A DNA stretch of 64,000 nucleotides from Anthoceros angustus (Eukaryota > Plantae > Anthocerotophyta), in the NCBI GenBank assembly GCA_010909165.1, contig MU008156.1:744001-808000 (forward strand), written 5' to 3'. Made by a program: the position numbers and the translations under genes. The notes beneath the pieces are model-generated. The model did no database searches, was not told where the DNA came from, and saw only the letters and a program-made list of their open reading frames with translations. This document shows positions 23,055 through 64,000 of this stretch, one piece after another (position 1 is the stretch's first letter; every line of letters starts with the position of its first letter).

Positions 23055-23621
23055 CTTATTAAATTTGAGCATCCATTTCACTTACCTTAAGCTCCAAAGC
23101 TAGCCTTTTCTATAAGCCGCATACTTGCCATAATTGCACAGTTGCTAATTTTGGGACTCCTTACAATGACACATGTATGGACTACCCCTATAGACAACAT
23201 TCTCTCTATAAATTACGTAGTAATATATATAAGCGTGTTTCCAAGCATATAACTACTTCTATAAGCATGACTTGTTAATGTATATAGTTCTTAGTTTACC
23301 TCATTTTATTTTCTTATTGTATTTCAACGGTTCTTATTTCTAGCTTTATACAACTATTTTAGGGATGGTTCTAAGTTAGAAGTTCATACCCCTATATGAG
23401 GATATAGGCTAGTACAAAGTCAAAGCAAGACTACATACTCCAAGAAAAATCTCGATAGTTCACACTATTGTGCTATATATGTAAATACAACATTTGATTG
23501 AGCTCAAGAAGCTTTATGAGTTACTTGAGTTTTTCGAATCAAAATTATTCGCCATCGGTCAAATCTCCCTTGTACGTAAATCAAACTTGTGACCTAGTTG
23601 CCTAAACTGTGGGGCATCAAG

Positions 23622-26600
23622 ATGAGCACGATGGAGAAGACTTCAAAAGCCGCGGTGTTAGAGGAGACTACAAGACCCACCGTAGTGGAGGAGACTCAGC
23701 ACCCACGATGGTGGAGAGACTCTAGCGCCCATGGTGGTGGAGGAGTCAACAGGACCCAAGGTGATGGCGGAGGAGGAGACTGCAAGAGCCATGGCGGTGG
23801 CCGAGCTCAAGACTCTAGCATCCACCGTGGGGAAGAGGAGGAGACTAGTACAACAAGAGCCTGCATGGTGGAGAAGGAGGAGCATACTACAGAGCCACAG
23901 TCATGGTGGAGGCGGAGGAGACTCCAGCAGAGCCATGGTGGAGGAGGAGGAGCATCTGCAAGAGCCATAGTCATGGTGGAGGAGGAGGAGCATCTGCAGG
24001 AGCCACGGTCATGTTGGAGGCAGAGAGACTCCAACAGCAGCCACGGTGGTGGTGGAGGAGGAGGAGCATCGCACGAGCCATAGTCATGGTGGAGGAGGAG
24101 GAGACTACAAGAGCTACGGTGGAGGAGGAGGAGCATATTGCAGCACCCACGGTCATGTTGAGGCAGGAGGAGACTGCAAGAGCCACATGGTGGAGGAGGA
24201 GGGGCATATCGCACGAGCCATAGTCATGGTGGAGGAGGAGGAGACTACAAGAGCTACGGTGGAGGAGGAGGAGCATATTGCAGCACCACGGTCATGTTGG
24301 AGGCAGAGGAGACTCCAGCAGCAGCCACGGAGGAGGAGGAGACTACAAGAGCTACGGTGGTGGACGATGAGGAAACTATAAGAACCAGTGCGGTGACAAT
24401 GAGCATACTACAAGAGCCCCGGAGAAGAGGAGGAGCATATTGAAGGAGCCACGGTCATGGTGGAGGATGAGGAGACTGCAGGCCACGATGGATGGGGAGG
24501 AGACTAGAAGAGCCATGGTGGAGGATGAGGAGACTACAAGAGCCACGGTGGAGGAGGAGGGGCATATCGCACGAGCCACTCGTGGTGGAGGATGAGCATC
24601 GCAGTGCAGCCACGGTGGAGGAGGAGGAGACTACAAGACCCACATTGCATGTGGAGGACGAGCATATTGCAGCGACCACGCTCATGGTGGAGGATGAGGA
24701 AACTACAGGAGCCAAGATGGAGGAGGAGGAGACTACACGAGCCACGGTGGTGGAGGAGACTGCAGTGCTACCCACACGCGTGGTGAAGGAGGAGGAGACT
24801 ACAGGAGCCAGTGGCGGAGGAGACTCCAGACTACCCAAGATGGTGGAAGAGGAGCATACCACAGGAGCCACGTAATGGTGGACGAGGAGAATATTACGCT
24901 ACGGTGATGGAGGAAGAGGAGGAGACTCCAAGCAGCCACAATGGTCAAGAAGGAGGAGGAGACCCTAGTAGAAACCACGGTGGTGGTGGAGGAGGTGGAG
25001 ACTCCAACATGCGCTGACCGACGGTGGTGGAGGATGAGGAGGAGTCTCAAACAACATCAACGGTGATGGAGGAGGAGGAGACTCTAGCGGCCGTGACGCT
25101 GGTGGATCGAAGGAGGAGACTCTAGCAGATCCATGGTGTTGGAGGATCGTGAAGAGGCGCATGTTTCAGAGCCACGGCGAAGGTGGATATTTCATACGTA
25201 ATCTACAACGGAGAGTAGCTCAAAATTAGGGCCCATGATAGAGGAGACTCTAGAATTAGAATCGACGGTGGTGGAGGAGACTCTAGAATCCATGCATATG
25301 GCGAAGAGTCCAAAATCGACTCCATGGCGAGGAGAGTCCGGAATCAAAATCCACGGTGGAGGAGACTCCAAAACCAAAATCCACTAAGGATACAAAATGT
25401 ATTTTGTCAAATATCCAAAGCCTCTTGAAAGTTCATACAATGGAAAAATTGCATCAAAGGAGCTTGAAGTGAAGTGGTATCTGTGAGTGCGAGATGTTTT
25501 ACATGCTGGAGTTGTATTCAAAAGGTATGAGAAGGACAACGTGCTCACTATGTTGAAAGTACTGCAACTAGCTCAACTCATGAGTTAGACCTTGCTAAAC
25601 TACAAAGACAAAAACTAGCTTAGAACAAGAGATAAAACAAATTTCAACAAGAAAGGAATTAGAAATGAAAAGCAACAGAAGCATATCAAGAGCTCCAAGC
25701 ATTGCCGTGGAGAAGAATGCGAGCATGAAGCATACAATGAAAATCGCAAAGGGATCAAATATTATGTTATTGGCAAAAGAAAAGGACAAGGCTGCACTTG
25801 AGGTGGAATGTAAAAAGCAAGTCGAAACATTTTTTCCTTGTGGAATGCTAGTAGCTCAACATTTCAAATCATTATATTTGTGCGAATGAGTTGAGAACAT
25901 TGTATCGACTAGCAATCGCAGACGGAAGAACACTATCGGATGAAGAGTTGTTATCTTTGAAATTTGAAATACCGGAAGATCCACCTGCTTCCCGGACCAT
26001 CAATGTATAAAAATATTGATGATCTGATTTCAATAGGCTTAAAAATGTTGCACAAGAAGAAAATTATGGACCATGCATCCACCGCATTGCCCAAGAAGGA
26101 CTACGGGCATCCACCGCATTGCCCAAGAAGGGATTACAGTATCCACCACATTGCCCAAAAGGACAACAGCATCAACGACATTGACTAGAAAGGGACTACA
26201 AACATCCACAATTGAAAGTATACAGTGCATCCACGCACCGCCATTGCAAGAAGGACTACAGGTGCATCCATAGTTGAAAGTGTACAGGCTCCATCCACGG
26301 CCGCCATTGCCCAAAGAGGGACTACAGGCATCCAGCTGAAAGTATACAGTGCATCCACAGCCCGCCATTGCCCAAAGAGGGACTACAGGCATCCACAACT
26401 AAAAGTATACAGGCTCCATCCACATCTCCGCCATTGCCCAAAGAGGGACCTGCATCCACTAAAAGTACACATGCTCCATCCACAGCCCGCCATTGCCCAA
26501 AGAGGGACTACAAGCATCCACGCTTGAAAGTATACAGCATCCACCGCATTGCCCAAAAGGGACTATGTGCATCTATGTTATTGATTGGAAAGGGACTACA

Positions 26601-27315
26601 GGCATCCACGCCACCATTGCCGGCCCAAGAAGGTCTGAGCATCCACGACAATTCCGCGGAGGAGCTAGACATCCACGACACCACTTAGGTTGACTCGCAT
26701 GGAGAAGCAAAACAAAAAGTCACAAAAGAGCAAAAGTCTATCGATCAACATGGAAAGAAAAGATATGATTACAACTCGAATGCCAATATTTTTCGTGCTT
26801 AGAAGTTGATGATGGTTGCGAAATGGATGGCATGTCATCAATTCCAAAGCCGGAGGTTGTGAGAAAAAACAACTCATGGGGTCTCAAAGGCCCATGTTGA
26901 CAAAGCAAATTCGTGTTTTGGATGCTGATCGGTAAAAATGCAATAATTCACTAGCCTTGAAGATATCAATGCCTATTGGGGACGAAGATACATTTTTGAT
27001 AAGGACTCTCAAAAGAACTTCAATGCAATTCTGTGCCAACCATTTCCATGACACATGTCTACTTCCTAATGAAGACCCTTTGAATGCCATGCATTCTAGA
27101 GCAATAGCAAGGCCTCATAAGGCAAGTGGTCACAAGGCTTCAAAGAAAAAGGAGAGTTGCTGGTCCGGATCAAGAAAAACAGTCTTCATATGCATGTTTT
27201 GGTCCCGATCAAGAAAAAGTCTTCATATGCATGTTTTGGAGCACGTGGTTGGATTTTCCTAGCTATTTTTATTGTTATTGGTGTGATGATTGCCTATATG
27301 TGCTTTTCACGTTAA
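23622..27315 (+). CDS. Array unit 1: PPI (proton pump interactor)-like repeat protein; frameshifted in this assembly (gene or pseudogene)
   Basis: Glu/Thr-rich repeats (~23620-25190); PPI-like block YKMYFVKYPKP...KQKAYQELQ...NENRK...LAKEKDKAALE...QVETFFSLWN...RL..DGRTL.DEE (~25390-25960, restored across homopolymer indels); PPLPKEGLQAST repeats (~26070-26680); hydrophobic tail ending IVIGVMIAYMCFSR-stop. Confidence 0.65.
23650..25190 (+). repeat. Purine-rich minisatellite of ~30-36 bp units (representative copy; present in every unit)
   Basis: Core atggtggaggaggaggagactacaagagc(t/c)acg, translating as (M)VEEEETTRAT / VEEEEHIAAPT. Confidence 0.92.
26070..26680 (+). repeat. Minisatellite of ~33-bp and ~63-66 bp units (representative copy; present in every unit)
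   Basis: Core ccgccattgcccaaagagggactacaggcatccaca..(t)gaaagtataca, translating as PPLPKEGLQAST.ESIQAPST. Confidence 0.92.
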
Positions 27316-28388
27316 GTTTTTCGAATGACTCAAGCAAGTTTATTTTTGTAGTACGGTGTCGCTATGATGTAAGCAAGTTCACTTGAAAAATACTCCCTAT
27401 GTTCTCAAATTTTTAATTTTATTTTCATCAAGAGATGAGTTTTTTCATATCTTTGTCTTATTACAAATTCCATGTATTGCTCTGCTTAGTATGGTGCTAG
27501 TTTGTTTGAACAACTTAGATGGTTGGGGGATCGGGAGGAGGGTACGCAGAACCATCGAGCTATGCTACCTCCCATAGCATCGATCCCACGTATTGTCGTT
27601 GTCTAGTATATCCTACATATGGCACTGTCTAGTAGAATTCTTAACATGCGATTTTGTTACAAGCATGCCTTCACATGTAAAGACCATCAAGTAGTAGATC
27701 CCTCCAAAAGGAAACCTTGTACTTCTAAGTCCATCAAATACTAAGCCCATCCAAGAAAACCAATACCACCAATATGACCAGTTCACTGGTTTATCATAGA
27801 ATAATCTTCCAATCCATACATTCTTATTAAATTTGAGCATACATTTCACTTACCTTAAGCTCCAAAGCTAGCCTTTTCTATAAGCCGCAGACTTGCCATA
27901 ATTGCACTGATTGCTAATTTTGGGACTCCTTACAACGACACATGTATGGACTACCCTATAGGCAACATTCTCTATAAATTACATAGTAATATATATAAGC
28001 GTGTTTCCAAGCATATAACTACTTCTATAAGCATGACTTGTTAATGTATATAGTTCTTAGTTTACCTCATTTTATTTTCTTATTGTATTTCAACGGTTCT
28101 TATTTCTAGCTTTATACAACTATTTTAGGGATGGTTCTAAGTTAGGAAGTTCATACCCTATATGAGGATATAGGCTAGTACAAAGTCAAAGCAGACTACA
28201 TACTCCAAGAAAAAATCTCGATAGTTCACACTATTGTGCTATATGTAAATACAACATTTGATTGAGCTCAAGAAGCTTTATGAGTTACTTGAGTTTTTCG
28301 AATCAAAATTATTCGCCTTCTGGTCAAATCTCCCTTGTACGTAAATCAAACTTGTGACCTAGTTGCCTAACTGCCGTGGGGCATCAAG

Positions 28389-31300
28389 ATGAGCACGATG
28401 GAGAAGACTTCAAAAGCAGCGGTGTTAGAGGAGACTACAAAGACCCACCGTAGTGGAGGAGACTCTAGCACCCACGATGGTGGAGAGACTCTAGCGCCCA
28501 TGGTGGTGGAGGAGTCAGGACCCAAGGTGATGGCGGAGGAGGCGCAAGAGCCATGGCGGTGGCCGAGCTCAAGACTCTAGCATCCACTGGGGGAAGAGGA
28601 GGAGACTAGTACAACAAGAGCCTGCATGGTGGAGAAGGAGGAGCATACTACAGAGCCATAGTCATGGTGGAGGCGGAGGAGACTCAGCAGCCAGTGGAGG
28701 AGGAGGAGGAGGAGACTACAAGAGCCATAGTCATGGTGGAGGAGGAGGAGCATACTACAGAGCCACGGTCATGTTGGAGGCAGAGGAGACTACAAGAGCC
28801 TGCATGGTGGAGGAGGAGGAGCGTCGCACGAGCCATAGTCATGGTGGAGGAGGAGGAGACTACAAGAGCTACGGTGGAGGAGGAGGAGCATATTGCACCA
28901 CGGCCATGTTGGAGGCAGAGGAGACTCCAGCAGCCAGTGGAGGAGGAGGAGCATCGCGAGCCATAGTCATGGTGGAGGAGGAGGAGACTACAAGAGCTAC
29001 GGTGGAGGAGGAGCATATTGCAGCACCCACGGCCATGTTGGAGGCAGAGGAGACTCCAGCAGCCAGTGGAGGAGGAGGAGACTACAAGAGCCACGGTGGT
29101 GGGCGATGAGGAAACTATAAGAACCAGTGCAGACAATGAGCATACTACAAGAGCCCGGAGAAGAGGAGGAGCATATTGAAGGAGCCACGGTCATGGTGTG
29201 GAGGATGAGGAGACTGCAGGCCACGATGGATGGGGAGGAGACTAGAAGAGCCATGGCGGTGGCCGAGCTCAAGACTCTAGCATCCACTGGGGGAAGAGGA
29301 GGAGACTAGTACAACAAGAGCTGCATGGTGGAGAAGGAGGAGCATACTACAGAGCCACGGTCATGGTGGAGGCGGAGGAGACTACAGAGCCACAGTGGAG
29401 GAGGAGGAGCACTGCAAGAGCCATAGTCATGGTGGAGGAGGAGGAGCATACTGCAGCCACGTCATGTTGGAGGCAGAGGAGACTCCAAGCAGCCACGTGG
29501 AGGAGGAGCGATCGCACGAGCCATAGTCATGGTGGAGGAGGAGGAGACTACAAGAGCTACGGTGGAGGAGGAGGAGCATATTGCAGCACCCACGGTCATG
29601 TTGGAGGCAGAGGAGACTCCAGCAGCCACAGTGGAGGAGGAGGAGCATACGCACGAGCCATAGTCATGGTGGAGGAGGAGGAGACTACAAGAGCTACGGA
29701 GGAGGAGGAGCATATTGCAGCCACGGTCATGTTGGAGGCGAGAGGAGACTCAGCAGCAGCCACAGTGGAGGAGGAGGAGACTACAAGAGCCACGGTGGTG
29801 GAGGATGAGGAAACTATAAGAACCACAGTGCAGACAATGAGCATACTACAAGAGCCCGGAGAAGAGGAGGAGCATATTGAAGGAGCCACGCCATGGTGGA
29901 GGATGAGGAGACTGCAGGCCACGATGGATGGGGAGGAGACTACAAGACCCACATTGCATGTGGAGGATGAGGAGACTACAAGAGCCACGGTGGAGGAGGA
30001 GGGGCATATCGCACGAGCCACGGCCGTGGTGGAGGATGAGCGATCGCAGTGCAGCCACAGTGGAGGAGGAGGAGACAAGACCCACATTGCATGTGGAGGA
30101 CGAGCATATTGCGACCACGCTCATGGTGGAGGATGAGGAAACTACAGGAGCCAAGATGGAGGAGGAGGAGACTACACGAGCCACGGTGGTGGAGGAGACT
30201 GCTACCCACACGCGTGGTGAAGGAGGAGGAGACTACAGAGCCACGGTGGCGGAGGAGACTCAGACTACCCAAGATGGTGGAAGAGGAGCATACTACAGGA
30301 GCCACGTAATGGTGGACGAGGAGAATATTACGCTTCGGTGATGGAGGAAGAGGAGGAGACTCAACAAGAGCCACAATGGTCAAGAAGGAGGAGGAGACCT
30401 AGTAGAAACCACGGTGGTGGTGGAGGAGGTGGAGACTCAACATGCGCTGCACACGGTGGTGGAGGATGAGGAGGAGTCTCAAACAACATCAACGTGGTGA
30501 TTACGGAGGAGGAGACTCTAGCGGCCGTGACGCTGGTGGATCCAAGGAGGAGACTCTAGCGATCCATGGTGTTGGAGGATCGTGAAGAGGCGATGTTTGT
30601 GGAGCCACGGCAAGGTGGATATTTCATATCTGAGAATCTACAACGGAGAGTAGCTCAAAATTAGGGCCCATGATAGAGGAGACTCTAGAATTAGAATCGA
30701 TGGAGGAGACTCTAGAATCCATGCATATGGCGGCGAAGAGTCCAAAATCAGACTCCATGGCGAGGAGAGTCCGGAATCAAAATCCACGGTGGAGGAGACT
30801 CCAAAACCAAAATCCACAGAAGGATACAAAATGTATTTTGTCAAATATCCAAAGCCTCTTGAAAGTTCATACAATGGAAAAATTGCATCAAAGGAGCTTG
30901 AAGTGAAGTGGTGGAGTGCGAGATGTTTTACATGCCGGAGTTGTATTCAAAAGGTATGAGAAGGACAACGTGCTCACTATGTTGAAAAGCACTGCAACTA
31001 GCTCAACTCATGAGTTAGACCTTGCTAAACTACAAAGACAAAAACTAGCTTAGAACAAGAGATAAAACAGCCTTCAACAAGAAGGGAATTAGAAAATGAA
31101 AAGCAGAAAGCATATCAAGAGCTCCAAGCATTGCATGTGGAGAAGAATGCGAGCATGAAGCATACAATGAAAATCGCAAAGGGATCAAATATTATGTTAT
31201 TGGCAAAAGAAAAGGACAAGGTGCACTTGAGGTGGAATGTAAAAGCAAGTCGAAACATTTTTTCCTTGTGGAATGCTAGTAGCTCAACATTTCAAATCGT

Positions 31301-34300
31301 TATATTTGTGCGAATGAGTTGAGAACATTATCGACTAGGCAATCGCAGACTAAGAACACTATCGGATGAAGAGTTGTTATCTTTGAAATTTGAAATACCA
31401 AGATCCACAGTGCTTCCGGACCATCAATGTATAAAAATATTGATGATCTGATTTCAATAGGCTTAAAAATGTTGCACAAGAAGAAAATTATGGACTGCAT
31501 CCACCGCATTGCCCAAGAAGGACTACAGCATCCACCGCATTGCCCAAGAAGGGATTACAGGCATCCACCACATTGCCCAAAAGGACAACAGCATCAACGA
31601 CATTGACTAGAAAGGGACTACAAACATCCACAATTGAAAGTATACAGTCGCATCCACGCACCGCCATTGCCCAAGAAGGACTACATGCATCCATAGTTGA
31701 AAGTATACAGCTCCATCCACGGCACCGCCATTGCCCAAAGAGGGACTAAGGCATCCACAGCTGAAAGTATACAAGTGCATCCACAGCCCGCCATTGCCCA
31801 AAGAGGGACCAGGCATCCACCTAAAAGTATATGTGCTCCATCCACATCTCCGCCATTGCCCAAAGAGGGACTACAGCATCCACAACTAAAAGTACACATG
31901 CTCCATCCACGCCCGCCATTGCCCAAAGAGGGACTACAAGCATCCACAGCTTGAAAGTATACAGCATCCACCGCATTGCCCCAAAAGGGACTATGTGCAT
32001 CTATGTTATTGATTGGAAAGGGACTACAGGCATCCACAGGCCACCATTGCCGGCGCCCAAGAAGGTCTGGTGCATCCACGACAATTCCCGGAGGAGCTAC
32101 AGACATCCACGACACCACTTAGGTTGACTCGCATGGAGAAGCAAAACAAAAAGTCACAAAGAGCAAAAGTCTATCGATCAACATGGAAAGAAAAGATATG
32201 ATTACAACTCGAATGCCAATATTTTTCGTGCTTAGAAGTTGATGATGGTTGCGAAATGGATGGCATGTCATCAATTCCAAAGTCGGGAGGTTGTGAGAAA
32301 AACAACTCATGGGGTCTCAAAGGCCCATGTTGACAAAGCAAATTCGTGTTTTGGATGCTGATGGTAAAATGCAATAATTCACTAGCCTTGAAGATATCAA
32401 TGCCTATTGGGGACGAAGATACATTTTTGATAAGGACTCTCAAAAGAACTTCAATGCAATTCTGGTGCCAACCATTTCCATGACACATGTCTACTTCCTA
32501 ATGAAGACCTTTGAATGCCATGCATTCTAGAGCAATAGCAAGGCCTCATAAGGCAAGTGGTCACAAGGCTTCAAAGAAAAGGACAACAGCATCAACGACA
32601 TTGACTAGAAAGGGACTACAAACATCCACAATTGAAAGTATACAGTGCATCCACAGCCCGCCATTGCAAGAAGGACTACAGTGCATCCATAGTTGAAAGT
32701 GTACAGGCTCCATCCACGCGCCGCCATTGCCCAAAGAGGGACTACAGGCATCCGCAGCTGAAAGTATACAAGCATCCACAGCCCGCCGCCATTGCCCAAA
32801 GAGGGACTACAGGCATCCACGCCTAAAAGTATACAGGCTCCATCCACATCTCCGCCATTGCCCAAAGAGGGACTGAGGCATCCACAACTAAAAGTACACA
32901 TGCTCCATCCACGCCCGCCATTGCCCAAAGAGGGACTACAAGCATCCACAGCTTGAAAGTATACAGGCATCCACCGCATTGCCCCAAAAGGGACTACATG
33001 TGCATCTATGTTATTGATTGGAAAGGGACTACAGCATCCACAGGCCACCATTGCCGGCGCCCAAGAAGGTCTACAGCATCCACGACAATTCCCGGAGGAG
33101 CTACAGACATCCACGACACCACTTAGGTTGACTCGCATGGAGAAGCAAAACAAAAAGTCACAAAGAGCAAAAGTCTATCGATCAACATGGAAAGAAAAGA
33201 TATGATTACAACTCGAATGCCAATATTTTTCGTGCTTAGAAGTTGATGATGGTTGCGAAATGGATGGCATGTCATCAATTCCAAAGTCGGGAGGTTGTGA
33301 GAAAAACAACTCATGGGGTCTCAAAGGCCCATGTTGACAAAGCAAATTCGTGTTTTGGATGCTGATGGTAAAATGCAATAATTCACTAGCCTTGAAGATA
33401 TCAATGCCTATTGGGGACGAAGATACATTTTTGATAAGGACTCTCAAAAGAACTTCAATGCAATTCTGGTGCCAACCATTTCCATGACACATGTCTACTT
33501 CCTAATGAAGACCTTTGAATGCCATGCATTCTAGAGCAATAGCAAGGCCTCATAAGGCAAGTGGTCACAAGGCTTCAAAGAAAAAGGGACAACAGCATCA
33601 ACGACATTGACTAGAAAGGGACTACAAACATCCACAATTGAAAGTATACAGTGCATCCACAGCCCGCCATTGCAAGAAGGACTACAGTGCATCCATAGTT
33701 GAAAGTGTACAGGCTCCATCCACGGCGCCGCCATTGCCCAAAGAGGGACTACAGGCATCCGCAGTTGAAAGTATACAAGCTGCATCCACAGCTCTGCCAT
33801 TGCCCAAAGAGGGACTACAGGCATCCACAGCTAAAAGTATACAGGCTCCATCCACATCTCCGCCATTGCCCAAAGAGGGACTACAGGCATCCACAACTAA
33901 AAGTACACATGCTCCATCCAGCCCGCCATTGCCCAAAGAGGGACTACAAGCATCCACAGCTTGAAAGTATACAGGCATCCACCGCATTGCCCCAAAAGGG
34001 ACTACATGTGCATCTATGTTATTGATTGGAAAGGGACTACAGCATCCACAGGCCACCATTGCCGGCGCCCAAAGAAGGTCTACAGCATCCACGACAATTC
34101 CCGGAGGAGCTACAGACATCCACGACACCACTTAGGTTGACTCGCATGGAGAAGCAAAACAAAAAGTCACAAAGAGCAAAAGTCTATCGATCAACATGGA
34201 AAGAAAAGATATGATTACAACTCGAATGCCAATATTTTTCGTGCTTAGAAGTTGATGATGGTTGCGAAATGGATGGCATGTCATCAATTCCAAAGTCGGG

Positions 34301-34762
34301 AGGTTGTGAGAAAAAACAACTCATGGGGTCTCAAAGGCCCATGTTGACAAAGCAAATTCGTGTTTTGGATGCTGATCGGGTAAAATGCAATAATTCACTA
34401 GCCTTGAAGATATCAATGCCTATTGGGGACGAAGATACATTTTTGATAAGGACTCTCAAAAGAACTTCAATGCAATTCTGGTGCCAACCATTTCCATGAC
34501 ACATGTCTACTTCCTAATGAAGACCTTTGAATGCCATGCATTCTAGAGCAATAGCAAGGCCTCATAAGGCAAGTGGTCACAAGGCTTCAAAGAAAAAGGA
34601 GAGTTGCGCTGGTCCGGATCAAGAAAAAGTCTTCATATGCATGTTTTGGTCCCGATCAAGAAAAAGTCTTCATATGCATGTTTTGGAGCACGTGGTTGGA
34701 TTTTCCTAGCTATTTTTATTGTTATTGGTGTGATGATTGCCTATATGTGCTTTTCACGTTAA
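28389..34762 (+). CDS. Array unit 2: PPI-like repeat protein with a duplicated acidic block and a triplicated Pro-rich/C-terminal segment; frameshifted
   Basis: Same blocks as unit 1, with jumps back at about 29250, 32580 and 33585. Confidence 0.5.
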
Positions 34763-36077
34763 GTTTTCGAATGACTCAAGCAAGTTTATTTTTGTAGTAC
34801 TGTCGCTATGATGTAAGCAAGTTCACTTGAAAAATACTCCCTATGTTCTCAAATTTTTAATTTTATTTTCATCAAGAGATGAGTTTTTTCATATCTTTGT
34901 CTTATTACAAATTCCATGTATTGCTCTGCTTAGTATGGTGCTAGTTTGTTTGAACAACTTAGATGGTTGGGGGATCGGGAGGGAGGGTACGCAAGAACCA
35001 TCGAGCTATGCTACCTCCCATAGCATCGATCCCACGTGTATTGTCGCTATGATGTAAGCAAGTTCACTTGAAAAATACTCCCTATGTTCTCAAATTTTTA
35101 ATTTTATTTTCAATCAAGAGATGAGTTTTTTCATATCTTTGTCTTATTACAAATTCCATGTATTGCTCTGTTTAGTATGGTGCTAGTTTGTTTGAACAAC
35201 TTAGATGGTTGGGGGATCGGGAGGGAGGGTACGCAAGAACCATCGAGCCATGCTACCTCCATAGCATCGATCCCACGTGTATTGTCGCTGTTCAGTATAT
35301 CCTACATATGGCACCGGTGTCAGTAGAATTCTTAACATGCAAGATTTTGTTACAAGCATGCCTTCACATGTAAAGACCATCAAGTAGTAGATCCCTCCAA
35401 AAGGAAACCTTGTACTTCTAAGTCCATCAAATACTAAGCCCATCCAAGAAAACCAATACCACCAATATGACCAGTTCACTGGTTTATCATAGAATAATCT
35501 TCCAATCCATACATTCTTATTAAATTTGAGCATACATTTCACTTACCTTAAGCTCCAAAGCTAGCCTTTTCTATAAGCCGCAGACTTGCCATAATTGCAT
35601 TGCTAATTTTGGGACTCCTTACAACGACACATGTATGGACTACCCCTATAGGCAACATTCTCTATAAATTACATAGTAATATATATAAGCGTGTTTCCAA
35701 GCATATAACTACTTCTATAAGCATGACTTGTTAATGTATATAGTTCTTAGTTTACCTCATTTTATTTTCTTATTGTATTTCAACGTTCTTATTTCTAGCT
35801 TTATACAACTATTTTAGGGATGGTTCTAAGTTAGGAAGTTCATACCCTATATGAGGATATAGGCTAGTACAAAGTCAAAGCGACTACATACTCCAAGAAA
35901 AATCTCGATAGTTCACACTATTGTGCTATATATGTAAATACAACATTTGATTGAGCTCAAGAAGCTTTATGAGTTACTTGAGTTTTTTCGAATCAAAATT
36001 ATTCGCCTTACGGTCAAATCTCCCTTGTCGTAAATCAAACTTGTGACCTAGTTGCCTAAATCGTGTGGGGCATCAAG

Positions 36078-52900: not shown

Positions 52901-54744
52901 TGTTATTGGTGTGATGATTGCCTATATGTGCTTTTCACGTTAAGTTTTCGAATGACTCAAGCAAGTTTATTTTTGTAGTACGTCGCTATGATGTAAGCAA
53001 GTTCACTTGAAAAATACTCCCTATGTTCTCAAATTTTTAATTTTATTTTCACCAAGAGATGCTTCAACAAGAAGGGAATTAGAAAATGAAAAGCAGAAAG
53101 CATATCAAGAGCTCCAAGCATTGCAGGAGAAGAATGCGAGCATGAAGCATACAATGAAAATCGCAAAGGGATCGTAAATATTATGTTATTGGCAAAAGAA
53201 AAGGACAAGGCTGCACTTGAGGTGGAATGTAAAAGCAAGTCGAAACATTTTTTCCTTGTGGAATGCTAGTAGCTCAACATTTCAAATCGTTATATTGTGC
53301 GAATGAGTTGAGAACATTGTATCGACTAGGCAATCGCAGACGGAAGAACACTATCGGATGAAGAGTTGTTATCTTTGAAATTTGAAATACGGAAGATCCA
53401 CCAGTGCTTCCGGACCATCAATGTATAAAAATATTGATGATCTGATTCAATAGGCTTAAAAATGTTGCACAAGAAGAAAATTATGGACTACGAGGCATCC
53501 ACCGCATTGCCCAAGAAGGGACTACAGGCATCCACCGCATTGCCCAAGAAGGGATTACAGGCATCCACCACATTGCCCAAAAGGGACAACAGCATCAACG
53601 ACATTGACTAGAAAGGGACTACAAACATCCACAATTGAAAGTATACAGTGCATCCACGGCACCGCCATTGCAAGAAGGACTGGTGCATCCATAGTTGAAA
53701 GTGTCTGTGCTCCATCCACGCGCCCGCCATTGCCCAAAGAGGGACTGCATCCGCAGCTTGAAAGTATACAGTGCATCCACAGCCCGCCATTGCCCAAAGA
53801 GGGACTGAGCATCCACTAAAAGTATACAGCTCCATCCACATCTCCGCCATTGCCCAAAGAGGGACTACAGGCATCCACAACTAAAAGTACACATGCTCCA
53901 TCCACGGCACCGCCATTGCCCAAAGAGGGACTACAAGCATCCACAGCTTGAAAGTATACAGGCATCCACCGCATTGCCCCAAAAGGGACTACAGGCATCT
54001 ATGTTATTGATTGGAAAGGGACTACATGCATCCACGCCACCATTGCCGGCGCCCAAGAAGGTCTACAGGCATCCACGATTCCGCGGAGGAGCTGAGACAT
54101 CCACGACACCACTTAGGTTGACTCGCATGGAGAAGCAAAACAAAAAGTCACAAAAGAGCAAAAGTCTATCGATCAACATGGAAAGAAAAGATATGATTAC
54201 AACTCGAATGCCAATATTTTTCGTGCTTAGAAGTTGATGATGGTTGCGAAATGGATGGCATGTCATCAATTCCAAAGTCATCGGAGGTTGTGAGAAAAAC
54301 AACTCATGGGGTCTCAAAGGCCCATGTTGACAAAGCAAATTCGTGTTTTGGATGCTGATCGGTAAAATGCAATAATTCACTAGCCTTGAAGATATCAATG
54401 CCTATTGGGGACGAAGATACATTTTTGATAAGGACTCTCAAAAGAACTTCAATGCAATTCTGGTGCCAACCATTTCCATGACACATGTCTACTTCCTAAT
54501 GAAGACCCTTTGAATGCCATGCATTCTAGAGCAATAGCAAGGCCTCATAAGGCAAGTGGTCACAAGGCTTCAAAGAAAAAGGAGAGTTGCTGGTCCGGAT
54601 CAAGAAAAACAGTCTTCATATGCATGTTTTGGTCCCGATCAAGAAAAAGTCTTCATATGCATGTTTTGGAGCACGTGGTTGGATTTTCCTAGCTATTTTA
54701 TTGTTATTGGTGTGATGATTGCCTATATGTGCTTTTCACGTTAA
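46966..54744 (+). CDS. Array unit 5: PPI-like repeat protein with repeated re-entry into the PPI-like block; frameshifted
   Basis: Jumps back into the PPI-like block at about 50466, 51186 and 53061; tail stop codons at 52943 and 54744. Confidence 0.45.
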
Positions 54745-55816
54745 GTTTTCGAATGACTCAAGCAAGTTTATTTTTGTAGTACGGTCGCTATGATGTAAGC
54801 AAGTTCACTTGAAAAATACTCCCTATGTTCTCAAATTTTTAATTTTATTTTCCGAAGAGATGAGTTTTTCATATCTTTGTCTTATTACAAATTCCATGTA
54901 TTGCTCTGCTTAGTATGGTGCTAGTTTGTTTGAACAACTTAGATGGTTGGGGGATCGGAGGGAGGGTACGCAGTAACCATCGAGCTATGCTACCTCCCAT
55001 AGCATCGATCCCACGTGTATTGTCGTTGTTCAGTATATCCTACATATGGCACTGTCTAGTAGAATTCTTAACATGCGATTTTGTTACAAGCATGCCTTCA
55101 CATGTAAAGACCATCAAGTAGTAGATCCTCCAAAAGGAAACCTTGTACTTCTAAGTCCATCAAATACTAAGCCCATCCAAGAAAACCAATACCACCAATA
55201 TGACCAGTTCACTGGTTTATCATAGAATAATCTTCCAATCCATACATTCTTATTAAATTTGAGCATACATTTCACTTACCTTAAGCTCCAAAGCTAGCCT
55301 TTTCTATAAGCCGCAGACTTGCCATAATTGCACAGCTAATTTTGGGACTCCTTACAACGACACATGTATGGACTACCCCTATAGGCAACATTCTCTCTAT
55401 AAATTACATAGTAATATATATAAGCGTGTTTCCAAGCATATAACTACTTCTATAAGCATGACTTGTTAATGTATATAGTTCTTAGTTTACCTCATTTTAT
55501 TTTCTTATTGTATTTCAACGTTCTTATTTCTAGCTTTATACAACTATTTTAGGGATGGTTCTAAGTTAGAAGTTCATACCCCTATATGAGGATATAGGCT
55601 AGTACAAAGTCAAAGCGATTACTACATACTCCAAGAAAAAATCTCGATAGTTCACACTATTGTGCTATATATGTAAATACAACATTTGATTGAGCTCAAG
55701 AAGCTTTATGAGTTACTTGAGTTTTTCGAATCAAAATTATTCGCCTTCTTGGTCAAATCTCCTTGTACGTAAATCAAACTTGTGACCTAGTTGCCTAAAT
55801 GCTGTGGGGCATCAAG

Positions 55817-58800
55817 ATGAGCACGATGGAGAAGACTTCAAAAGCCGGGTGTTAGAGGAGACTACTGACCCACCGTAGTGGAGGAGACTCTAGCACCCAC
55901 GATGGTGGAGAGACTCTAGCGCCCATGGTGGTGGAGAGTCAGGACCCAAGGTGATGGCGGAGGAGGCATCTGCAAGAGCCATGGCGGTGGCCGAGCTCAA
56001 GACTCTAGCATCCACCGTGGGGGAAGAGGAGGAGACTAGTACAACAAGAGCCACATGGTGGAGAAGGAGGAGCATACTACAGGAGCCACGGTCATGTTGG
56101 AGGCGGAGGAGACTCAACAGCAGCCAGTGGAGGAGGAGGAGCATCGCAAGAGCCATAGTCATGGTGGAGGAGGAGGAGCATCTGCAGGAGCCACGGTCAT
56201 GTTGGAGGCGAGGAGACTCCAACAGAGCCACGGGAGGAGGAGGAGCGTCTTGCACGAGCCATAGTCATGGTGGAGGAGGAGGAGACTACAAGAGCTACGG
56301 TGAGGAGGAGGAGCATATTGCAGCACCCACGGTCATGTTGGAGGCAGAGGAGACTCCAGCAGCCACAAGTGGAGGAGGAGGAGCATCGCACGAGCCATAG
56401 TCATGGTGGAGGAGGAGGAGACTACAAGAGCTACGGTGGAGGAGGAGGCATATTGCAGCCACGGTCATGTTGGAGGCGGAGGAGACTGCAGAGCCACAGT
56501 GGAGGAGGAGGAGACTACAAGAGCCACGGTGGTGGGCGATGAGGAAACTATAAGAACCACGGTGCAGACAATGAGCATACTACAAGAGCCCGGAGAAGAG
56601 GAGGAGCATATTGAAGGAGCCACTACCATGGTGGAGGAGGAGGCTGCAGGCCACGATGGATGGGGAGGAGACTACAGGAGCCAAGATGGTGGAGGATGAG
56701 GAGACTACAAGAGCCATGGTGGAGGAGGAGGAGCATCGCAAGAGCCACGCCGTGGTGGAGGATGAGCAGATCAGTGCAGCCACGGTGGAGGAGGAGGAGA
56801 CTACAAGACCCACATTGCATGTGGAGGACGAGCATATTGCGACCACGCCATGGTGGAGGATGAGGAAACCACAGGAGCCAAGATGGAGGAGGAGGAGACT
56901 ACAGGAGCCACGGTGGTGGAGGCTGCAGTGCTACCCACACGCGTGGTGAAGGAGGAGGAGACTACAAGACCCACCGTAGTGGAGGAGACTCTAGCACCCA
57001 CGATGGTGGAGAGACTCTAGCGCCCATGGTGGTGGAGGAGTCAACAGGACCCAAGGTGATGGCGGAGGAGGAGACTGCAAGAGCCATGGCGGTGGCCGAG
57101 CTCAAGACTCTAGCATCCACCGTGGGGGAAGAGGAGGAGACTAGTACAACAAGAGCACATGGTGGAGAAGGAGGAGCATACTACAGGAGCCACGGCCGTG
57201 GTGGAGGCGGAGGAGACTACAGGAGCCAAGATGGAGGAGGAGGAGCATACTGCAAGAGCCATAGTCATGGTGGAGGAGGAGGAGCATCTGCAGAGCCACT
57301 CATGTTGGAGGCAGAGGAGACTACAAGAGCTACGTGGAGGAGGAGGAGCGACGCACGAGCCATAGTCATGGTGGAGGAGGAGGAGACTACAAGAGCTACG
57401 GTGGAGGAGGAGGAGCATATTGCACCCACGGTCATGTTGGAGGCAGAGGAGACTCCAACAGCAGCCACAGTGGAGGAGGAGGAGCATCTGCACGAGCCAT
57501 AGTCATGGTGGAGGAGGAGGAGACTACAAGAGCTACGGTGGAGGAGGAGGAGACTAGTACAACAAGAGCCACGGTCATGTTGGAGGCAGAGGAGACTCCA
57601 ACAGCAGCCACAGTGGAGGAGGAGGAGACTACAAGAGCCACGGTGGGACGATGAGGAAACTATAAGAACCACGCAGTGTGACAATGAGCATACTACAAGA
57701 GCCCGGAGAAGAGGAGGAGCATATTGAAGGAGCCACGGTCATGGTGGAGGATGAGGAGACTGCAGGCCACGATGGATGGGGAGGAGACTACAAGACCCAC
57801 ATTGCATGTGGAGGATGAGGAGACTACAAGAGCCATGGTGGAGGAGGAGGCATCTTGCACGAGCCACGCCGTGGTGGAGGATGAGCGATCGCAGTGCAGC
57901 CACGTGGAGGAGGAGGAGACTACAAGACCCACATTGCATGTGGAGCATATTGCAGCACCACGCTCATGGTGGAGGATGAGGAAACTACAGGAGCCAAGAT
58001 GGAGGAGGAGGAGACTACAAGAGCCATGGTGGTGGAGGAGACTGCAGTGCTACCCACACGCGTGGTGAAGGAGGAGGAGACTACAGGAGCCACGGTGGCG
58101 GAGGAGACTGCAGAGCCACGGGAGGAGGAGGAGGAGCATCTGCAAGAGCCATAGTCATGGTGGAGGAGGAGGAGACTGCAGAGCCACCATGTTGGAGAGG
58201 AGACTCCAGCAGTGGAGGAGGAGGAGGAGCATCGCACGAGCCATAGTCATGGTGGAGGAGGAGGAGACTACAAGAGCTACGGTGGAGGAGGAGGAGCATA
58301 TTGCACCCACGGTCATGTTGGAGGCAGAGGAGACTCCAGCCAGCAGCCAGTGGAGGAGGAGGAGCATCTGCACGAGCCATAGTCATGGTGGAGGAGGAGA
58401 CTACAAGAGCTACGTGGAGGAGGAGGAGCATACTACAGAGCCACGGTCATGTTGGAGGCAGAGGAGACTCCAGCAGCCACAGTGGAGGAGGAGGAGACTA
58501 CAAGAGCCACGGTGGGACGATGAGGAAACTATAAGAACCACGTGCAGACAATGAGCATACTACAAGAGCCCGGAGAAGAGGAGGAGCATATTGAAGGAGC
58601 CACGGTCATGGTGGAGGATGAGGAGACTGCAGGCCACGATGGATGGGGAGGAGACTAGAAGAGCCACGGTGGAGGATGAGGAGACTACAAGAGCCATGGT
58701 GGAGGAGGAGGGGCATATCGCACGAGCCACGCCGTGGTGGAGGATGAGCGATCGCAGTGCAGCCACGGTGGAGGAGGAGGAGACTACAAGACCCACATTG

Positions 58801-61800
58801 CATGTGGAGGACGAGCATATTGCGACCACGCTCATGGTGGAGGATGAGGAAACTACAGGAGCCAAGATGGAGGAGGAGGAGACTACACGAGCCACGGTGG
58901 TGGAGGAGACTGCAGTGCTACCCACACGCGTGGTGAAGGAGGAGGAGGAGGAGACTACAGAGCCACGGTGGCGGAGGAGACTCGACTACCCAAGATGGTG
59001 GAAGAGGAGCATACTGGAGCCACAGAATGGTGGGCGAGGAGAATATTACACGCTACGGTGATGGAGGAAGAGGAGGAGACTCAGCAGCCACAATGGTCAA
59101 GAAGGAGGAGGAGACCCTAGTAGAAACCACGGTGGTGGTGGAGGAGGTGGAGACTCAACATGCGCCTGCATGGTGGTGGAGGATGAGGAGGAGTCTCAAA
59201 CAACATCAACGGTGGTGATTCCGGAGGAGGAGGAGACTCTAATGGTGGATCCAAGGAGGAGACTCTAGCAGATCCATGGTGTTGGAGGATCGTGAAGAGG
59301 CGATGTTTCAGAGCCACGGCGAAGGTGGATATTTCATACGTAATCTACAACGAGAGTAGCTCAAAATTAGGGCCCATGATAGAGGAGACTCTAGAATTAG
59401 AATCGGCTGGAGGAGACTCTAGAATCCATGCATATGGCGAAGAGTCCAAAATCGACTCCATGGCGAGGAGAGTCCGAATCAAAATCCACGGTGGAGGAGA
59501 CTCCACAACCAAAATCCACGGCGAAGGATACAAAATGTATTTTGTCAAATATCCAAAGCCTCTTGAAAGTTCATACAATGGAAAAATTGCATCAAAGGAG
59601 CTTGAAGTGAAGTGGTATACAGTGCGAGATGTTTTACATGCTGGAGTTGTATTCAAAAGGTATGAGAAGGACAACGTGCTCACTATGTTGAAAAGCAGTA
59701 CGTGCAACTAGCTCAACTCATGAGTTAGACCTTGCTAAACTACAAAGACAAAAACTAGCTTAGAACAAGAGATAAAACAGCTTCAACAAGAAGGGAATTA
59801 GAAAATGAAAAGCAGAAAGCATATCAAGAGCTCCAAGCATTGCATGTGAGAAGAATGCGAGCATGAAGCATACAATGAAAATCGCAAAGGGATCAAATAT
59901 TATGTTATTGGCAAAAGAAAAGGACAAGGCTGCACTTGAGGTGGAATGTAAAAAGCAAGTCGAAACATTTTTTCCTTGTGGAATGCTAGTAGCTCAACAT
60001 TTCAAATCGTTATATTTGTGCGAATGAGTTGAGAACATTGTATCGACTAATCGCAGACGGAAGAACACTATCGGATGAAGAGTTGTTATCTTTGAAATTT
60101 GAAATACCAAGATCCACCGCTTCCGGACCTTCAATGTATAAAAATATTGATGATAATCTGATTCCAATAGGCTTAAAATGTTGCACAAGAAGAAAATTAC
60201 GGACTAGGCATCCACCGCATTGCCCAAGAAGGGACTACAGCATCCACCGCATTGCCCAAGAAGGGATTACAGCATCCACCACATTGCCCAAAAGGACAAC
60301 AGCATCAACGACATTGACTAGAAAGGGACTACAAACATCCACAATTGAAAGTATGTGCATCCACCGCATTGCCCAAGAAGGACTACATCCATAGTTGAAA
60401 GTATACAGCATCCACAGTTGAAAGTATACAGCTCCATCCACGGCACCGCCATTGCCCAAAGAGGGACTACAGGCATCCGCAGCTGAAAGTATACAAGTGC
60501 ATCCACAGCTCGCCATTGCCCAAAGAGGGACTACAGCATCCACTAAAAGTATACAGCTCCATCCACATCTCCGCATTGCCCAAAGAGGGACTACAGCATC
60601 CACAACTAAAAGTACACATGCTCCATCCACGCCCGCCATTGCCCAAAGAGGGACTACAAGCATCCACAGTTGAAAGTATACAGGCATCCACCGCATTGCC
60701 CAAAAGGGACTACAGCATCTATGTTATTGATTGGAAAGGGACTAGGCATCCACGCCACCATTGCGGGCGCCCAAGAAGGTCTACAGCATCCACCACATTG
60801 CCCAAGAAGGAGGAGGCTGCAGTGCTACCCACACGCGTGGTGAAGGAGGAGGAGACTACTGGAGCCACGGTCATGGTGGAGGAGACTCGACTACCCAAGA
60901 TGGTGGAAGAGGAGCATACTACAGAGCCAGTGGTGGTGGACGAGGAGAATATTACACGCTACGGTGATGGAGGAAGAGGAGGAGACTCCAACAGCCACAA
61001 TGGTCAAGAAGGAGGAGGAGACCTAGTAGAAACCACGGTGGTGGTGGAGGAGGTGGAGACTCCAACAGAGCCACGGCCGTGGTGGAGGATGAGGAGGAGT
61101 CTCAAACAACATCAACGGTGGTGATTCGAGGAGGAGACTCTAGCGGACGTGTTGGTGGATCCAAGGAGGGACTCTAGCAGATCCATGGTGTTGGAGGATC
61201 GTGAAGAGGCGCATGTTTGAGCCACAAGGTGGATATTTCATACGTAATCTACAACGGAGTAGCTCAAAATTAGGGCCCATGATAGAGGAGACTCTAGAAT
61301 TAGAATCGGCTGGAGGAGACTCTAGAATCCATGCATATGGCGGCGAAGAGTCCAAAATCGACTCCATGGCGGAGGAGAGTCCGGAATCAAAATCCACGGT
61401 GGAGGAGACTCCACAAAATCCACTAGAAGGATACAAAATGTATTTTGTCAAATATCCAAAGCCTCTTGAAAGTTCATACAATGGAAAAATTGCATCAAAG
61501 GAGCTTGAAGTGAAGTGGTATACAGAGTGCGAGATGTTTTACATGCTGGAGTTGTATTCAAAAGGTATGAGAAGGACAACGTGCTCACTATGTTGAAAGC
61601 GGCTCGTGCAACTAGCTCAACTCATGAGTTAGACCTTGCTAAACTACAAAGACAAAAACTAGCTTAGAACAAGAGATAAAACAGCTTCAACAAGAAGGGA
61701 ATTAGAAAATGAAAAGCAACAGAAGCATATCAAGAGCTCCAAGCATTGCAGAGAAGAATGCGGAGCATGAAGCATACAATGAAAATCGCAAAGGGATCGA

Positions 61801-64000
61801 AATATTATGACGCTACGGTGATGGAGGAAGAGGAGGAGACTCCAACAGCAGCCACAATGGTCAAGAAGGAGGAGGAGACCCTAGTAGAAACCACGGTGGT
61901 GGTGGAGGAGGTGGAGACTCAACATGCGCCTGACCGACGGTGGTGGAGGATGAGGAGGAGTCTCAAACAACATCAACGGTGGTGATTCCGGAGGAGGAGA
62001 CTCCGTGACGCTGGTGGATCCAAGGAGGGACTCTAGCAGTATCCATGGTGTTGGAGGATCGTGAAGAGGCGCATGTTTCTGTGAGCCACGGCGAAGGTGG
62101 ATATTTCATACGTAATCTACAACGGAGAGTAGCTCAAAATTAGGGCCCATGATAGAGGAGACTCTAGAATTAGAATCGAGTGGAGGAGACTCTAGAATCC
62201 ATGCATATGGCGGCGAAGAGTCCAAAATCGACTCCATGGCGGAGGAGAGTCCGAATCAAAATCCACGGTGGAGGAGACTCCACAACCAAAATCCACTAGA
62301 AGGAAGGATACAAAATGTATTTTGTCAAATATCCAAAGCCTCTTGAAAGTTCATACAATGGAAAAATTGCATCAAAGGAGCTTGAAGTGAAGTGGTATCA
62401 GGAGTGCGAGATGTTTTACATGCTGGAGTTGTATTCAAAAGGTATGAGAAGGACAACGTGCTCACTATGTTGAAAAGCAGTGCAACTAGCTCAACTCATG
62501 AGTTAGACCTTGCTAAACTACAAAGACAAAAACTAGCTTAGAACAAGAGATAAAACAGCTTCAACAAGAAGGGAATTAGAAAATGAAAAGCAACAGAAGC
62601 ATATCAAGAGCTCCAAGCATTGCATGTGGAGAAGAATGCGGAGCATGAAGCATACAATGAAAATCGCAAAGGGATCGAAATATTATGTTATTGGCAAAAG
62701 AAAAGGACAAGGCTGCACTTGAGGTGGAATGTAAAAAGCAAGTCGAAACATTTTTTCCTTGTGGAATGCTAGTAGCTCAACATTTCAAATCGTTATATTT
62801 GTGCGAATGAGTTGAGAACATTGTATCGACTAGGCAATCGCAGACGGAAGAACACTATCGGATGAAGAGTTGTTATCTTTGAAATTTGAAATACGGAAGA
62901 TCCACCAGTGCTTCCGGACCTTCAATGTATAAAAATATTGATGAATCTGATTCAATAGGCTTAAAATGTTGCACAAGAAGAAGGACTACAGGCATCCACC
63001 GCATTGCCCAAGAAGGGACTACAGCATCCACCGCATTGCCCAAGAAGGATTACAGGCATCCACCACATTGCCCAAAAGGACAACAGCATCAACGACATTG
63101 ACTAGAAAGGGACTACAAACATCCACAATTGAAAGTATACAGTGCATCCACGGCACCGCCATTGCCCAAGAAGGGACTAGGCATCCATAGTTGAAAGTGT
63201 CTGTGCTCCATCCACGGCGCCGCCATTGCCCAAAGAGGGACTACAGGCAGCTGAAAGTATACAAGTCGCATCCACACCCGCCATTGCCCAAAGAGGGACT
63301 ACAGCATCCACAAAAAGTATACAGGCTCCATCCACATCTCCGCCATTGCCCAAGAAGGGATTACAGGCATCCACAACTAAAAGTACACATGCTCCATCCA
63401 CGCCCGCCATTGCCCAAAGAGGGACTACAAGCATCCACAGTTGAAAGTATACAGGCATCCACCGCATTGCCCAAAAGGGACTACAGCATCTATGTTATTG
63501 ATTGGAAAGGGACTACAGGCATCCACGCCACCATTGCCGGGCGCCCAAGAAGGTCTACAGCATCCACGACCCTCATGGAGGAGCTATGACATCCACGACA
63601 CCACTTAGGTTGACTCGCATGGAGAAGCAAAACAAAAAGTCACAAAAGAGCAAAAGTCTATCGATCAACATGGAAAGAAAAGATATGATTACAACTCGAA
63701 TGCCAATATTTTTCGTGCTTAGAAGTTGATGATGGTTGCGAAATGGATGGCATGTCATCAATTCCAAAGCCGGGAGGTTGTGAGAAAAACAACTCATGGG
63801 GTCTCAAAGGCCCATGTTGACAAAGCAAATTCGTGTTTTGGATGCTGATCGGTAAAAATGCAATAATTCACTAGCCTTGAAGATATCAATGCCTATTGGG
63901 GACGAAGATACATTTTTGATAAGGACTCTCAAAAGAACTTCAATGCAATTCTTGGTGCCAACCATTTCCATGACACATGTCTACTTCCTAATGAAGACCC
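55817..64000 (+). CDS. Array unit 6: PPI-like repeat protein, heavily re-duplicated, truncated by the window end
   Basis: Acidic block of about 3.5 kb; jumps back into it at about 60806 and 61809. Confidence 0.45.

What the first reader, a model, noticed from the sequence alone, without database searches (positions are those of the whole stretch)
23622..64000. Tandemly amplified family of PPI-derived, tail-anchored proteins carrying two coding minisatellites
Seen: what looks like satellite DNA is a head-to-tail array of at least 6 gene-like units. Each has an ATG, then Glu/Thr-rich 10-12-aa repeats, a unique block, Pro/Ser/Thr-rich 11/22-aa repeats, and a basic linker ending in a single C-terminal hydrophobic helix. 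Restoring single bases in homopolymers, the unique block reads YKMYFVKYPKP...KIASKE...VRDVL...KRYEK...EQEIKQLQQE...KQKAYQELQAL...YNENRK...LAKEKDKAALE...QVETFFSLWN...TLYRL..DGRTLSDEE. Established (from memory): plant proton pump interactors (Arabidopsis PPI1 family) bind the plasma-membrane H+-ATPase regulatory domain, share these motifs in this order (FYFVK, RDKAY, FYQNR, LA.KKD..ALE, EVEKFMSLW, DGR...DE) and end in a tail anchor. Inference: a lineage-specific amplification of a remodelled PPI with a long acidic disordered arm, possibly a dosage-amplified pump regulator or a membrane tether or scaffold. I know of no description of such an array.
Basis: partly seen in the sequence, partly recalled or inferred. 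Interest (0 to 1): 0.85.

Follow-up and report, generated by a model that had tools for sequence, protein, structure and literature searches.

The report
Tandem array of broken pump-regulator genes
A moss-relative plant genome holds a real head-to-tail array of a heavily remodelled gene related to regulators of the plant proton pump, but a separate sequencing run keeps the reading-frame breaks and no transcript was seen, so it is more likely silenced, repeated dead-gene DNA than a family of working proteins.

Summary
The array is real: six unit starts of a basic 4.77-kb unit from 23055 on. Contigs of public run X1 cover the unit and span the head-to-tail junction. Homology to the proton pump interactor (PPI) family is confirmed: a profile from 61 fetched homologues matches the copies in order, and a read-through with X at breaks scores 75 bits (E 2e-15; 40 bits without the motif used for fetching). 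The unit lacks about 125 central residues and the conserved C-terminal coil. A long acidic arm is not new: Arabidopsis At1g20970 has 816 residues of it. The 'working tail-anchored family' reading is not supported: three high-depth X1 contigs keep frame breaks in the PPI block and the linker, and the one RNA-like run shows no transcript. Caveat: X1's platform is unrecorded and the shared breaks resemble long-read errors, so an intact but silent family keeps about 30%. Copy differences cluster at CG/CHG, implying methylation. Best reading: a methylated, concertedly evolving, gene-derived macrosatellite. The scan already noted this array's continuation (s1-278029) and similar arrays of other genes in this genome (unchecked).

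The parts
21821..22327 (+). Left-edge remnant of the inter-unit spacer, 3.6% diverged by substitutions from inner copies (inner copies 0-0.9%)
22328..23054 (-). Short non-LTR retroelement fragment (Cys/His knuckle plus restriction-like endonuclease motifs, judged by eye; no Pfam hit) inserted in the edge unit, flanked by an 11-bp target duplication at 22317-22327 and 23055-23065; high-copy in X1
23055..27822 (+). Unit 1, the basic 4768-nt unit
23055..23621 (+). AT-rich upstream segment (GC 0.34), 1.3% diverged in the edge unit; TATA-like run at 23224, 398 nt before the ATG
23622..25385 (+). ATG and Glu/Thr-rich minisatellite arm (periods mostly 27-39 nt, multiples of three favoured); stays in frame over 24902-25062 in X1 (net +3)
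25386..25995 (+). PPI-homologous block (profile positions 5-81, 128-140, 208-307; about 125 central residues absent), frame-broken
26075..26560 (+). Pro/Ser/Thr-type minisatellite (periods 32-33 and 63-66 nt); coding status unresolved
26561..27160 (+). Linker; no match to the conserved C-terminal coil of PPI; stops in all three frames in X1 contigs over 26725-26918 and 26931-27160
27161..27239 (+). Near-perfect 37-nt tandem duplication just before the tail
27253..27315 (+). Single hydrophobic helix preceded by basic residues, then stop (27313-27315): tail-anchor-like end, weak match to the family's C-terminus
27316..27822 (+). AT-rich spacer; junction to the next unit spanned by X1 contig 8 (27650-27906, depth 126)
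27823..35515 (+). Unit 2, with the second minisatellite plus linker present three times (junction 27149 to 26157 in unit-1 terms; not among X1 joints)
35516..41645 (+). Unit 3, with a doubled Glu/Thr arm
41646..46403 (+). Unit 4, basic 4758-nt unit
46404..55248 (+). Unit 5, with partial repeats of the PPI block (50434, 51155, 53063) and two tails
55249..64000 (+). Unit 6 and rearranged partial units, running off the window end

Best explanation
A gene-derived macrosatellite. Step 1 (shown: homology; inferred: history): a PPI-family paralogue with the unbroken coding stretch seen in Sphagnum was remodelled while still under selection: central coil and C-terminal coil lost, acidic arm rebuilt from a minisatellite. 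Step 2 (inferred from X1 contigs): it acquired frame breaks in the PPI block and the linker, so the dominant unit cannot make a tail-anchored protein; at best a frame would end near 25888, before the DGR motif. Step 3 (shown: array, edge gradient; inferred: mechanism): a 4.77-kb segment holding upstream DNA, frame and 3' spacer was amplified head to tail and is kept uniform by unequal crossing-over or gene conversion, with older, less homogenised copies and a retroelement insertion at the edge. Step 4 (inferred): the array is CG/CHG-methylated heterochromatin and silent. The extra noise and probably some internal sub-duplications are long-read assembly error.
For: Homology 67-75 bits in most copies (45-75 overall) against 12-17 for shuffles; 19 of 25 near-invariant columns kept in the C-terminal part, on a long branch of 1.42 substitutions per site. 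X1 contig 7 (0 mismatches, one known inserted base) has stops in all frames; contig 6 has no open frame in any of 772 possible versions; contig 5 has net zero indels, and none of 134,338 compatible versions holds the four PPI motifs in one open frame. No X2 contig on the unit body beyond two short partial matches in the repeat; no protein from the array among 1.84 billion representatives. Edge divergence 3.6% and 1.3% against under 1% inside. Copy disagreement 1.2% away from, 5.8% near CG and 9.8% near CHG; in Anthoceros agrestis CG/CHG methylation marks transposons and repressed genes, not active gene bodies (PMC10952607). Four- and five-base runs are not depleted in the array, so short-run breaks shared by nearly all copies are not simply explained by run compression.
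Against: X1's library is not on record. Nearly all shared breaks are one-base shortfalls in homopolymers or beside CG/CHG, some copies carry the frame-keeping allele (3 of 10, 2 of 11, 1 of 10, 1 of 9), and no nonsense substitution shared by the copies remains once breaks are bridged: the signature of long-read error. X1 contig ends sit at such sites, and contig 8 is 4 nt shorter than all assembly copies, unexplained. Contigs drop rare variants, so an intact minority or master copy is not excluded. X2 is one run, only guessed to be RNA. Runs of seven or more bases do look compressed in inner copies.
Confidence: 0.6

Rival explanations
1. An intact or partly intact ampliconic gene family, silenced in vegetative tissue and used at one stage (for example sex organs or sporophyte). 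The product would be a roughly 1,200-residue tail-anchored protein with a minisatellite-built acidic arm and a shortened PPI coil, acting as a variant pump regulator or spacer at ER or plasma membrane. The breaks would be systematic long-read errors that X1 shares, or would be absent from a minority of copies.
For: Breaks are almost all one-base shortfalls at error-prone sites with no shared nonsense substitutions; near-invariant columns largely kept; Glu/Thr repeats favour multiples of three and stay in frame in X1; stop-free stretches of 94-108 codons in the linker and tail; contig 5 depth (92) is below that of other unit contigs (118-139), leaving room for dropped variants.
Against: X1 departs from the assembly majority at methylation hot spots (25913-25916, 26567-26568) and keeps a longer run at 26864, as accurate reads would, yet keeps the breaks; no transcript contig; central coil and C-terminal coil absent; H+-ATPase binding untested.
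Confidence: 0.3
2. The array is largely an assembly artefact: one or two loci written out many times from noisy reads.
For: Copies differ mainly by error-like changes; two partial copies (50642, 53157) share the same odd alleles; clean sub-duplication junctions are not among X1 joints although joints of depth 5-13 are listed.
Against: X1 contig 8 spans the insertion-free head-to-tail junction at the same depth as the unit body (126 against 118-139), window-specific alleles beside the array sit near depth 10-15, and edge copies carry substitution-type divergence and a target-duplicated insertion. Depth figures are rough and not a copy number.
Confidence: 0.07
3. Splicing rescues the frame: unannotated introns remove the broken stretches, for example a GT at 25808 to an AG near 25889 and a 3' site near 27099.
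For: GT and AG positions of matching phase exist by inspection (candidate lists).
Against: The first intron would remove the best-conserved part of the block and use a rare GAG acceptor; no strong donor lies upstream of the linker stops; the Sphagnum homologue is one 701-codon frame through the tail; no RNA support.
Confidence: 0.03

Closest known systems
Plant proton pump interactor family (Pfam PF27883 PPI_C; Arabidopsis PPI1 At4g27500, BIP103-named members, moss and liverwort members)
   Same: Same motifs in the same order, about 40% identity over the C-terminal part of the block, basic stretch plus single C-terminal hydrophobic helix. PPI1 is described as 612 residues with three coiled coils and a transmembrane domain, mainly at the ER, binding and stimulating the plasma-membrane H+-ATPase (PMC11394911).
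   Different: About 125 central residues and the conserved C-terminal coil are missing; two minisatellites are built in; frame is broken in the dominant unit; tandemly amplified; very long branch, no orthologue from its own lineage found.
Arabidopsis At1g20970 (UniProt F4HWC3) and related long PPI-like proteins
   Same: Long acidic N-terminal arm before the PPI domain (816 residues, 24% Asp+Glu; another member 953 residues, 26%), same DGR-containing motif, tail helix.
   Different: Their arm showed no DNA similarity to the array and was not seen to be a minisatellite, their domain is complete, and they are expressed (At1g20970 phosphopeptide in a membrane proteome, PMC4969306).
Gene-carrying macrosatellites and amplicons (human D4Z4 with DUX4, from my own knowledge; repeat-rich Marchantia V chromosome with ORF162, PMC9261002 for the gene's existence, its amplification from memory)
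   Same: Kilobase head-to-tail unit holding a gene-like frame, near-identical copies, inferred methylation silencing.
   Different: Cargo is a PPI derivative; lies next to ordinary genes; no expressed copy shown; no evidence for sex linkage.
Pseudogene-derived tandem repeats under concerted evolution (general knowledge)
   Same: Shared lesions across copies, more diverged edge copies, mobile-element insertion at the edge.
   Different: The ancestor was a strongly remodelled gene that seems to have stayed under selection for long; similar arrays of other regulators are noted in the same genome (scan notes, unchecked).

Membership tests
PPI family (PF27883) | Significant sequence similarity to PPI proteins, motifs in order | tested here: met
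   75 bits, E 2e-15 at 5.8 billion; 40 bits without the fetching motif; N-terminal piece 17 bits, in order
PPI family (PF27883) | Direct match to Pfam model PF27883 | not testable with these tools
   The Pfam copy on hand gave no such hit even for genuine members; the accession appears only as precomputed annotation
PPI family (PF27883) | Complete conserved coiled-coil domain including the central segment | tested here: not met
   Profile positions about 82-127 and 141-207 have no match in any copy
PPI family (PF27883) | Conserved C-terminal lysine/glutamate/alanine coil before the tail | tested here: not met
   C-terminal profile positions 120-175 not matched
PPI family (PF27883) | Single C-terminal transmembrane helix | tested here: met
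   Encoded at 27253-27309, hydropathy 2.66, weak profile match; not shown to be in frame with the domain
PPI family (PF27883) | Continuous reading frame from domain to tail | tested here: not met
   rests on X1, whose platform is unrecorded
PPI family (PF27883) | Expressed | tested here: inconclusive
   No contig of the single guessed RNA run on the unit
PPI family (PF27883) | Binds and stimulates the plasma-membrane H+-ATPase | not testable with these tools
   needs a binding assay
Gene-derived macrosatellite | Head-to-tail kilobase units of near-identical sequence, present in data other than the assembly | tested here: met
Gene-derived macrosatellite | Edge copies more diverged than inner copies (concerted evolution) | tested here: met
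   16 substitutions in 441 and 7 in 528 at the edge against 0-4 inside; left edge only
Gene-derived macrosatellite | Methylated, heterochromatic | tested here: inconclusive
   indirect only: error enrichment at CG/CHG; no bisulfite or signal-level data

The most novel reading that the evidence does not exclude
The units (or a minority of them) are intact and form an ampliconic, methylation-gated gene family for a remodelled PPI, a long tail-anchored protein with a minisatellite-built acidic arm that is switched on at one life stage; together with the similar arrays of remodelled TFIIB-, ELF1-, ALY- and PLATZ-like genes noted elsewhere in this genome it would mark an undescribed class of amplified, fast-evolving copies of conserved regulators in a bryophyte.
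Probability: 0.2. Interest if true: 0.7.

Novelty: new variant of a known kind. Interest (0 to 1): 0.33.

Why it matters
As a dead-gene macrosatellite it is a modest result: an example of how kilobase satellites are born from genes in a plant group reported to have only very short tandem arrays (PMC8075897; that search stopped at 2,000-bp periods, so a 4.8-kb unit would have been missed), and a warning that such arrays are unpolished in long-read assemblies. It also records a strongly remodelled PPI paralogue. If intact copies exist, it would give a natural deletion variant that tests which parts of PPI are needed for pump binding, and a first amplified PPI family.

Tried and rejected
Direct searches with stop-free pieces of the block failed: Pfam, word search, ESM Atlas, and phmmer against 1.84 billion representatives gave only a spurious repeat protein, P0001. 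Homologues were reached by a short degenerate motif (partly from memory, used only as a lead) scanned in metagenome contigs and then named by independent evidence; circularity was controlled by rescoring without that motif. No orthologue from this lineage was found; no DNA similarity to fetched loci. The first tree run returned nothing and was redone with FastTree; placement of the array is unresolved. The column count is valid only for profile positions 211-307, because the local alignment dropped the N-terminal piece. No paper on PPI in hornworts or liverworts or on such an array turned up. No structure prediction was run, since the stop-free pieces are short helices. The species was not identified; hornwort is a guess from genome size, gene content and other notes.
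Full report
Observation. Tiling and segment maps show a head-to-tail array from 23055 to the window end, with six upstream segments, six ATG starts, eight YKMYF motifs and six hydrophobic tails. The basic unit is 4.77 kb (units 1 and 4); units 2, 3, 5 and 6 are longer through internal duplications. Each unit runs: 0.57-kb AT-rich upstream segment, ATG, Glu/Thr minisatellite, unique block, Pro/Ser/Thr minisatellite, linker, 37-nt duplication, hydrophobic helix, stop, 0.5-kb spacer. An unchecked note says the array goes on for about 42 kb in the next window. Flanking DNA holds long open frames of ordinary-looking plant genes, so the noise is confined to the array.

Nature of the noise. Copies are 92-98% alike, mostly by one- or two-base indels. 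Disagreement per column is 1.2% away from methylatable sites, 5.8% near CG and 9.8% near CHG. By established knowledge this is the pattern of nanopore error on methylated DNA left unpolished in a repeat; methylation is therefore inferred, not measured. In Anthoceros agrestis CG and CHG methylation lies mainly on transposons and repressed genes (PMC10952607); whether this genome is that species is not known.

Is the array real? Only one public DNA run (X1) holds it, plus one guessed RNA run of the same sample (X2); X1 may be the assembled sample itself. X1 contigs cover the whole unit; contig 8 spans the insertion-free head-to-tail junction at depth 126, like the unit body (118-139), whereas window-specific alleles next to the array sit near 10-15. 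That fits roughly ten or more copies, but the tool warns that depth is no copy number. Edge copies differ by substitutions (3.6% and 1.3%) against under 1% inside, the gradient expected from homogenisation by unequal exchange. The clean internal duplication junctions are not among X1's joints, so those may be assembly artefacts.

Homology. Stop-free pieces were too short for direct searches. A degenerate motif scan of metagenome contigs returned 36 plant loci. One encodes a 1,397-residue protein holding the exact peptide assigned to Arabidopsis At1g20970; another is the Sphagnum fallax member, one 701-codon frame through the tail. Its relatives carry PF27883 (PPI_C) and names such as proton pump-interactor 1 and BIP103. 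A profile from 61 of them finds 42 pieces in the window at E up to 10; nearly all lie on the plus strand in the array's unique blocks, in order: positions 5-81, 128-140 and 208-307. Frameshift-aware alignment gives 45-75 bits per copy against 12-17 for shuffles and 11 for the reverse strand, and 43 bits without the fetching motif. The read-through with X at breaks scores 75 bits, E 2e-15. So PPI ancestry is established. But about 125 central residues are absent, the conserved C-terminal coil has no match, identity is about 40% where bryophyte members share 53-66% with the Sphagnum protein, and the branch is long with unresolved placement. Nineteen of 25 near-invariant columns survive in the C-terminal part, which suggests selection acted along most of that branch. 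A long acidic arm is a known feature of the At1g20970-like branch (816 and 953 residues, 24-26% acidic); only its minisatellite build is special here.

Is there a protein? Breaks at profile positions 246, 268 and 280 are shared by all seven aligned copies. X1 speaks against that. Contig 5 lays 254 letters on 254 with two gap letters, so the YNENRK and DGR motifs stay 188 nt apart unless one gap lies outside them, and none of 134,338 compatible versions holds the four conserved motifs in one open frame; the best-supported version ends in a stop before DGR. Contig 6 has no open frame in any of 772 versions. Contig 7 is fully determined and has stops in all three frames. The Glu/Thr arm, by contrast, stays in frame where it could be checked. 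X2 has no contig on the unit body. The weak point is X1's unrecorded platform. For accurate reads: it departs from the assembly majority at methylation hot spots, restores bases that most copies lack, and keeps a six-base run where six of nine copies have five; four- and five-base runs are not depleted in the array. For shared long-read error: nearly all breaks are one-base shortfalls at error-prone sites, some copies carry the frame-keeping allele, no shared nonsense substitution remains, contig ends fall at such sites, and contig 8 is four letters shorter than every copy. I put X1 as accurate at about 70-75%. Contigs also drop rare variants, so an intact minority is not excluded.

Mechanism. 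Most likely (0.6): a remodelled PPI paralogue lost its frame recently and its 4.77-kb segment became a methylated macrosatellite kept uniform by unequal crossing-over or conversion; it makes no tail-anchored protein. Shown: array, junction, homology, deletions, edge gradient, breaks in X1. Inferred: methylation, silence, order of events, mode of homogenisation. Rivals: intact but stage-specific ampliconic family (0.3), wholesale assembly artefact (0.07), rescue by splicing (0.03).

Comparison and novelty. It descends from the PPI family but fails three membership features (complete domain, C-terminal coil, continuous frame); whether its ancestor worked like PPI1, which binds and stimulates the H+-ATPase (PMC11394911), is untested. 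As a structure it is a gene-derived macrosatellite, a known kind. I found no description of a PPI array. Unchecked notes of this scan list similar arrays of TFIIB-, ELF1-, ALY-, PLATZ- and U-box-like genes in the same genome, so this is one case of a genome-wide habit rather than a special PPI system; that habit may be the more interesting thing, since hornwort genomes were reported to have only short tandem arrays in a search limited to 2,000-bp periods (PMC8075897).

Limits. Verdict: real array, real PPI ancestry, function not supported; new variant of a known kind; interest 0.33.

Noticed in passing
window:12020-13324 (-): 434-codon open frame, noted by the scan as PI3K-gamma adaptor-like; Pfam gives only sub-threshold hits to Pacs-1 (E 4e-4) and the DAGK catalytic domain (E 0.007), so a PACS-like identity is an alternative lead.
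   Followed up: partly
window:22328-23054 (-) and 20461-20823 (+): Two fragments with motifs like the restriction-like endonuclease end of non-LTR retroelements (by eye; no Pfam hit). The first has an 11-bp target duplication and reaches depth 1,000-5,000 in X1; short X2 contigs match it in part.
   Followed up: partly
window:1846-3623 (-), 5539-7741 (+), 8244-11800 (+), 16724-18091 (+): By eye from translations: a peptide/nitrate transporter of the NRT1/PTR type, a polygalacturonase-like gene, a GRAS gene with long glutamine runs, and an armadillo-repeat protein; frames look clean, showing that the noise is limited to the array.
   Followed up: no
window:27650-27906: X1 contig 8 is four letters shorter than all five assembly copies with no mismatches; unexplained.
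   Followed up: partly
window:34797-35289: A 242-nt stretch of the spacer is duplicated in unit 2 (98% match); junction not among X1 joints.
   Followed up: partly
L002:5897-7999, L019, L033, L036: The Sphagnum PPI gene is one 700-codon frame through its tail, whereas genomic seed-plant-like loci have a frame that begins 17-20 codons before the motif, suggesting an intron there that mosses lack.
   Followed up: partly
L016:159-4349: At1g20970, listed as uncharacterised in a membrane phosphoproteome, has a complete PPI-like domain, an 816-residue acidic arm and a tail helix; only three papers in the library mention it.
   Followed up: partly
P0001-P0006 (ENA contigs): Spurious hit: proteins called on a 71-codon tandem repeat, probably satellite DNA read as genes.
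   Followed up: no
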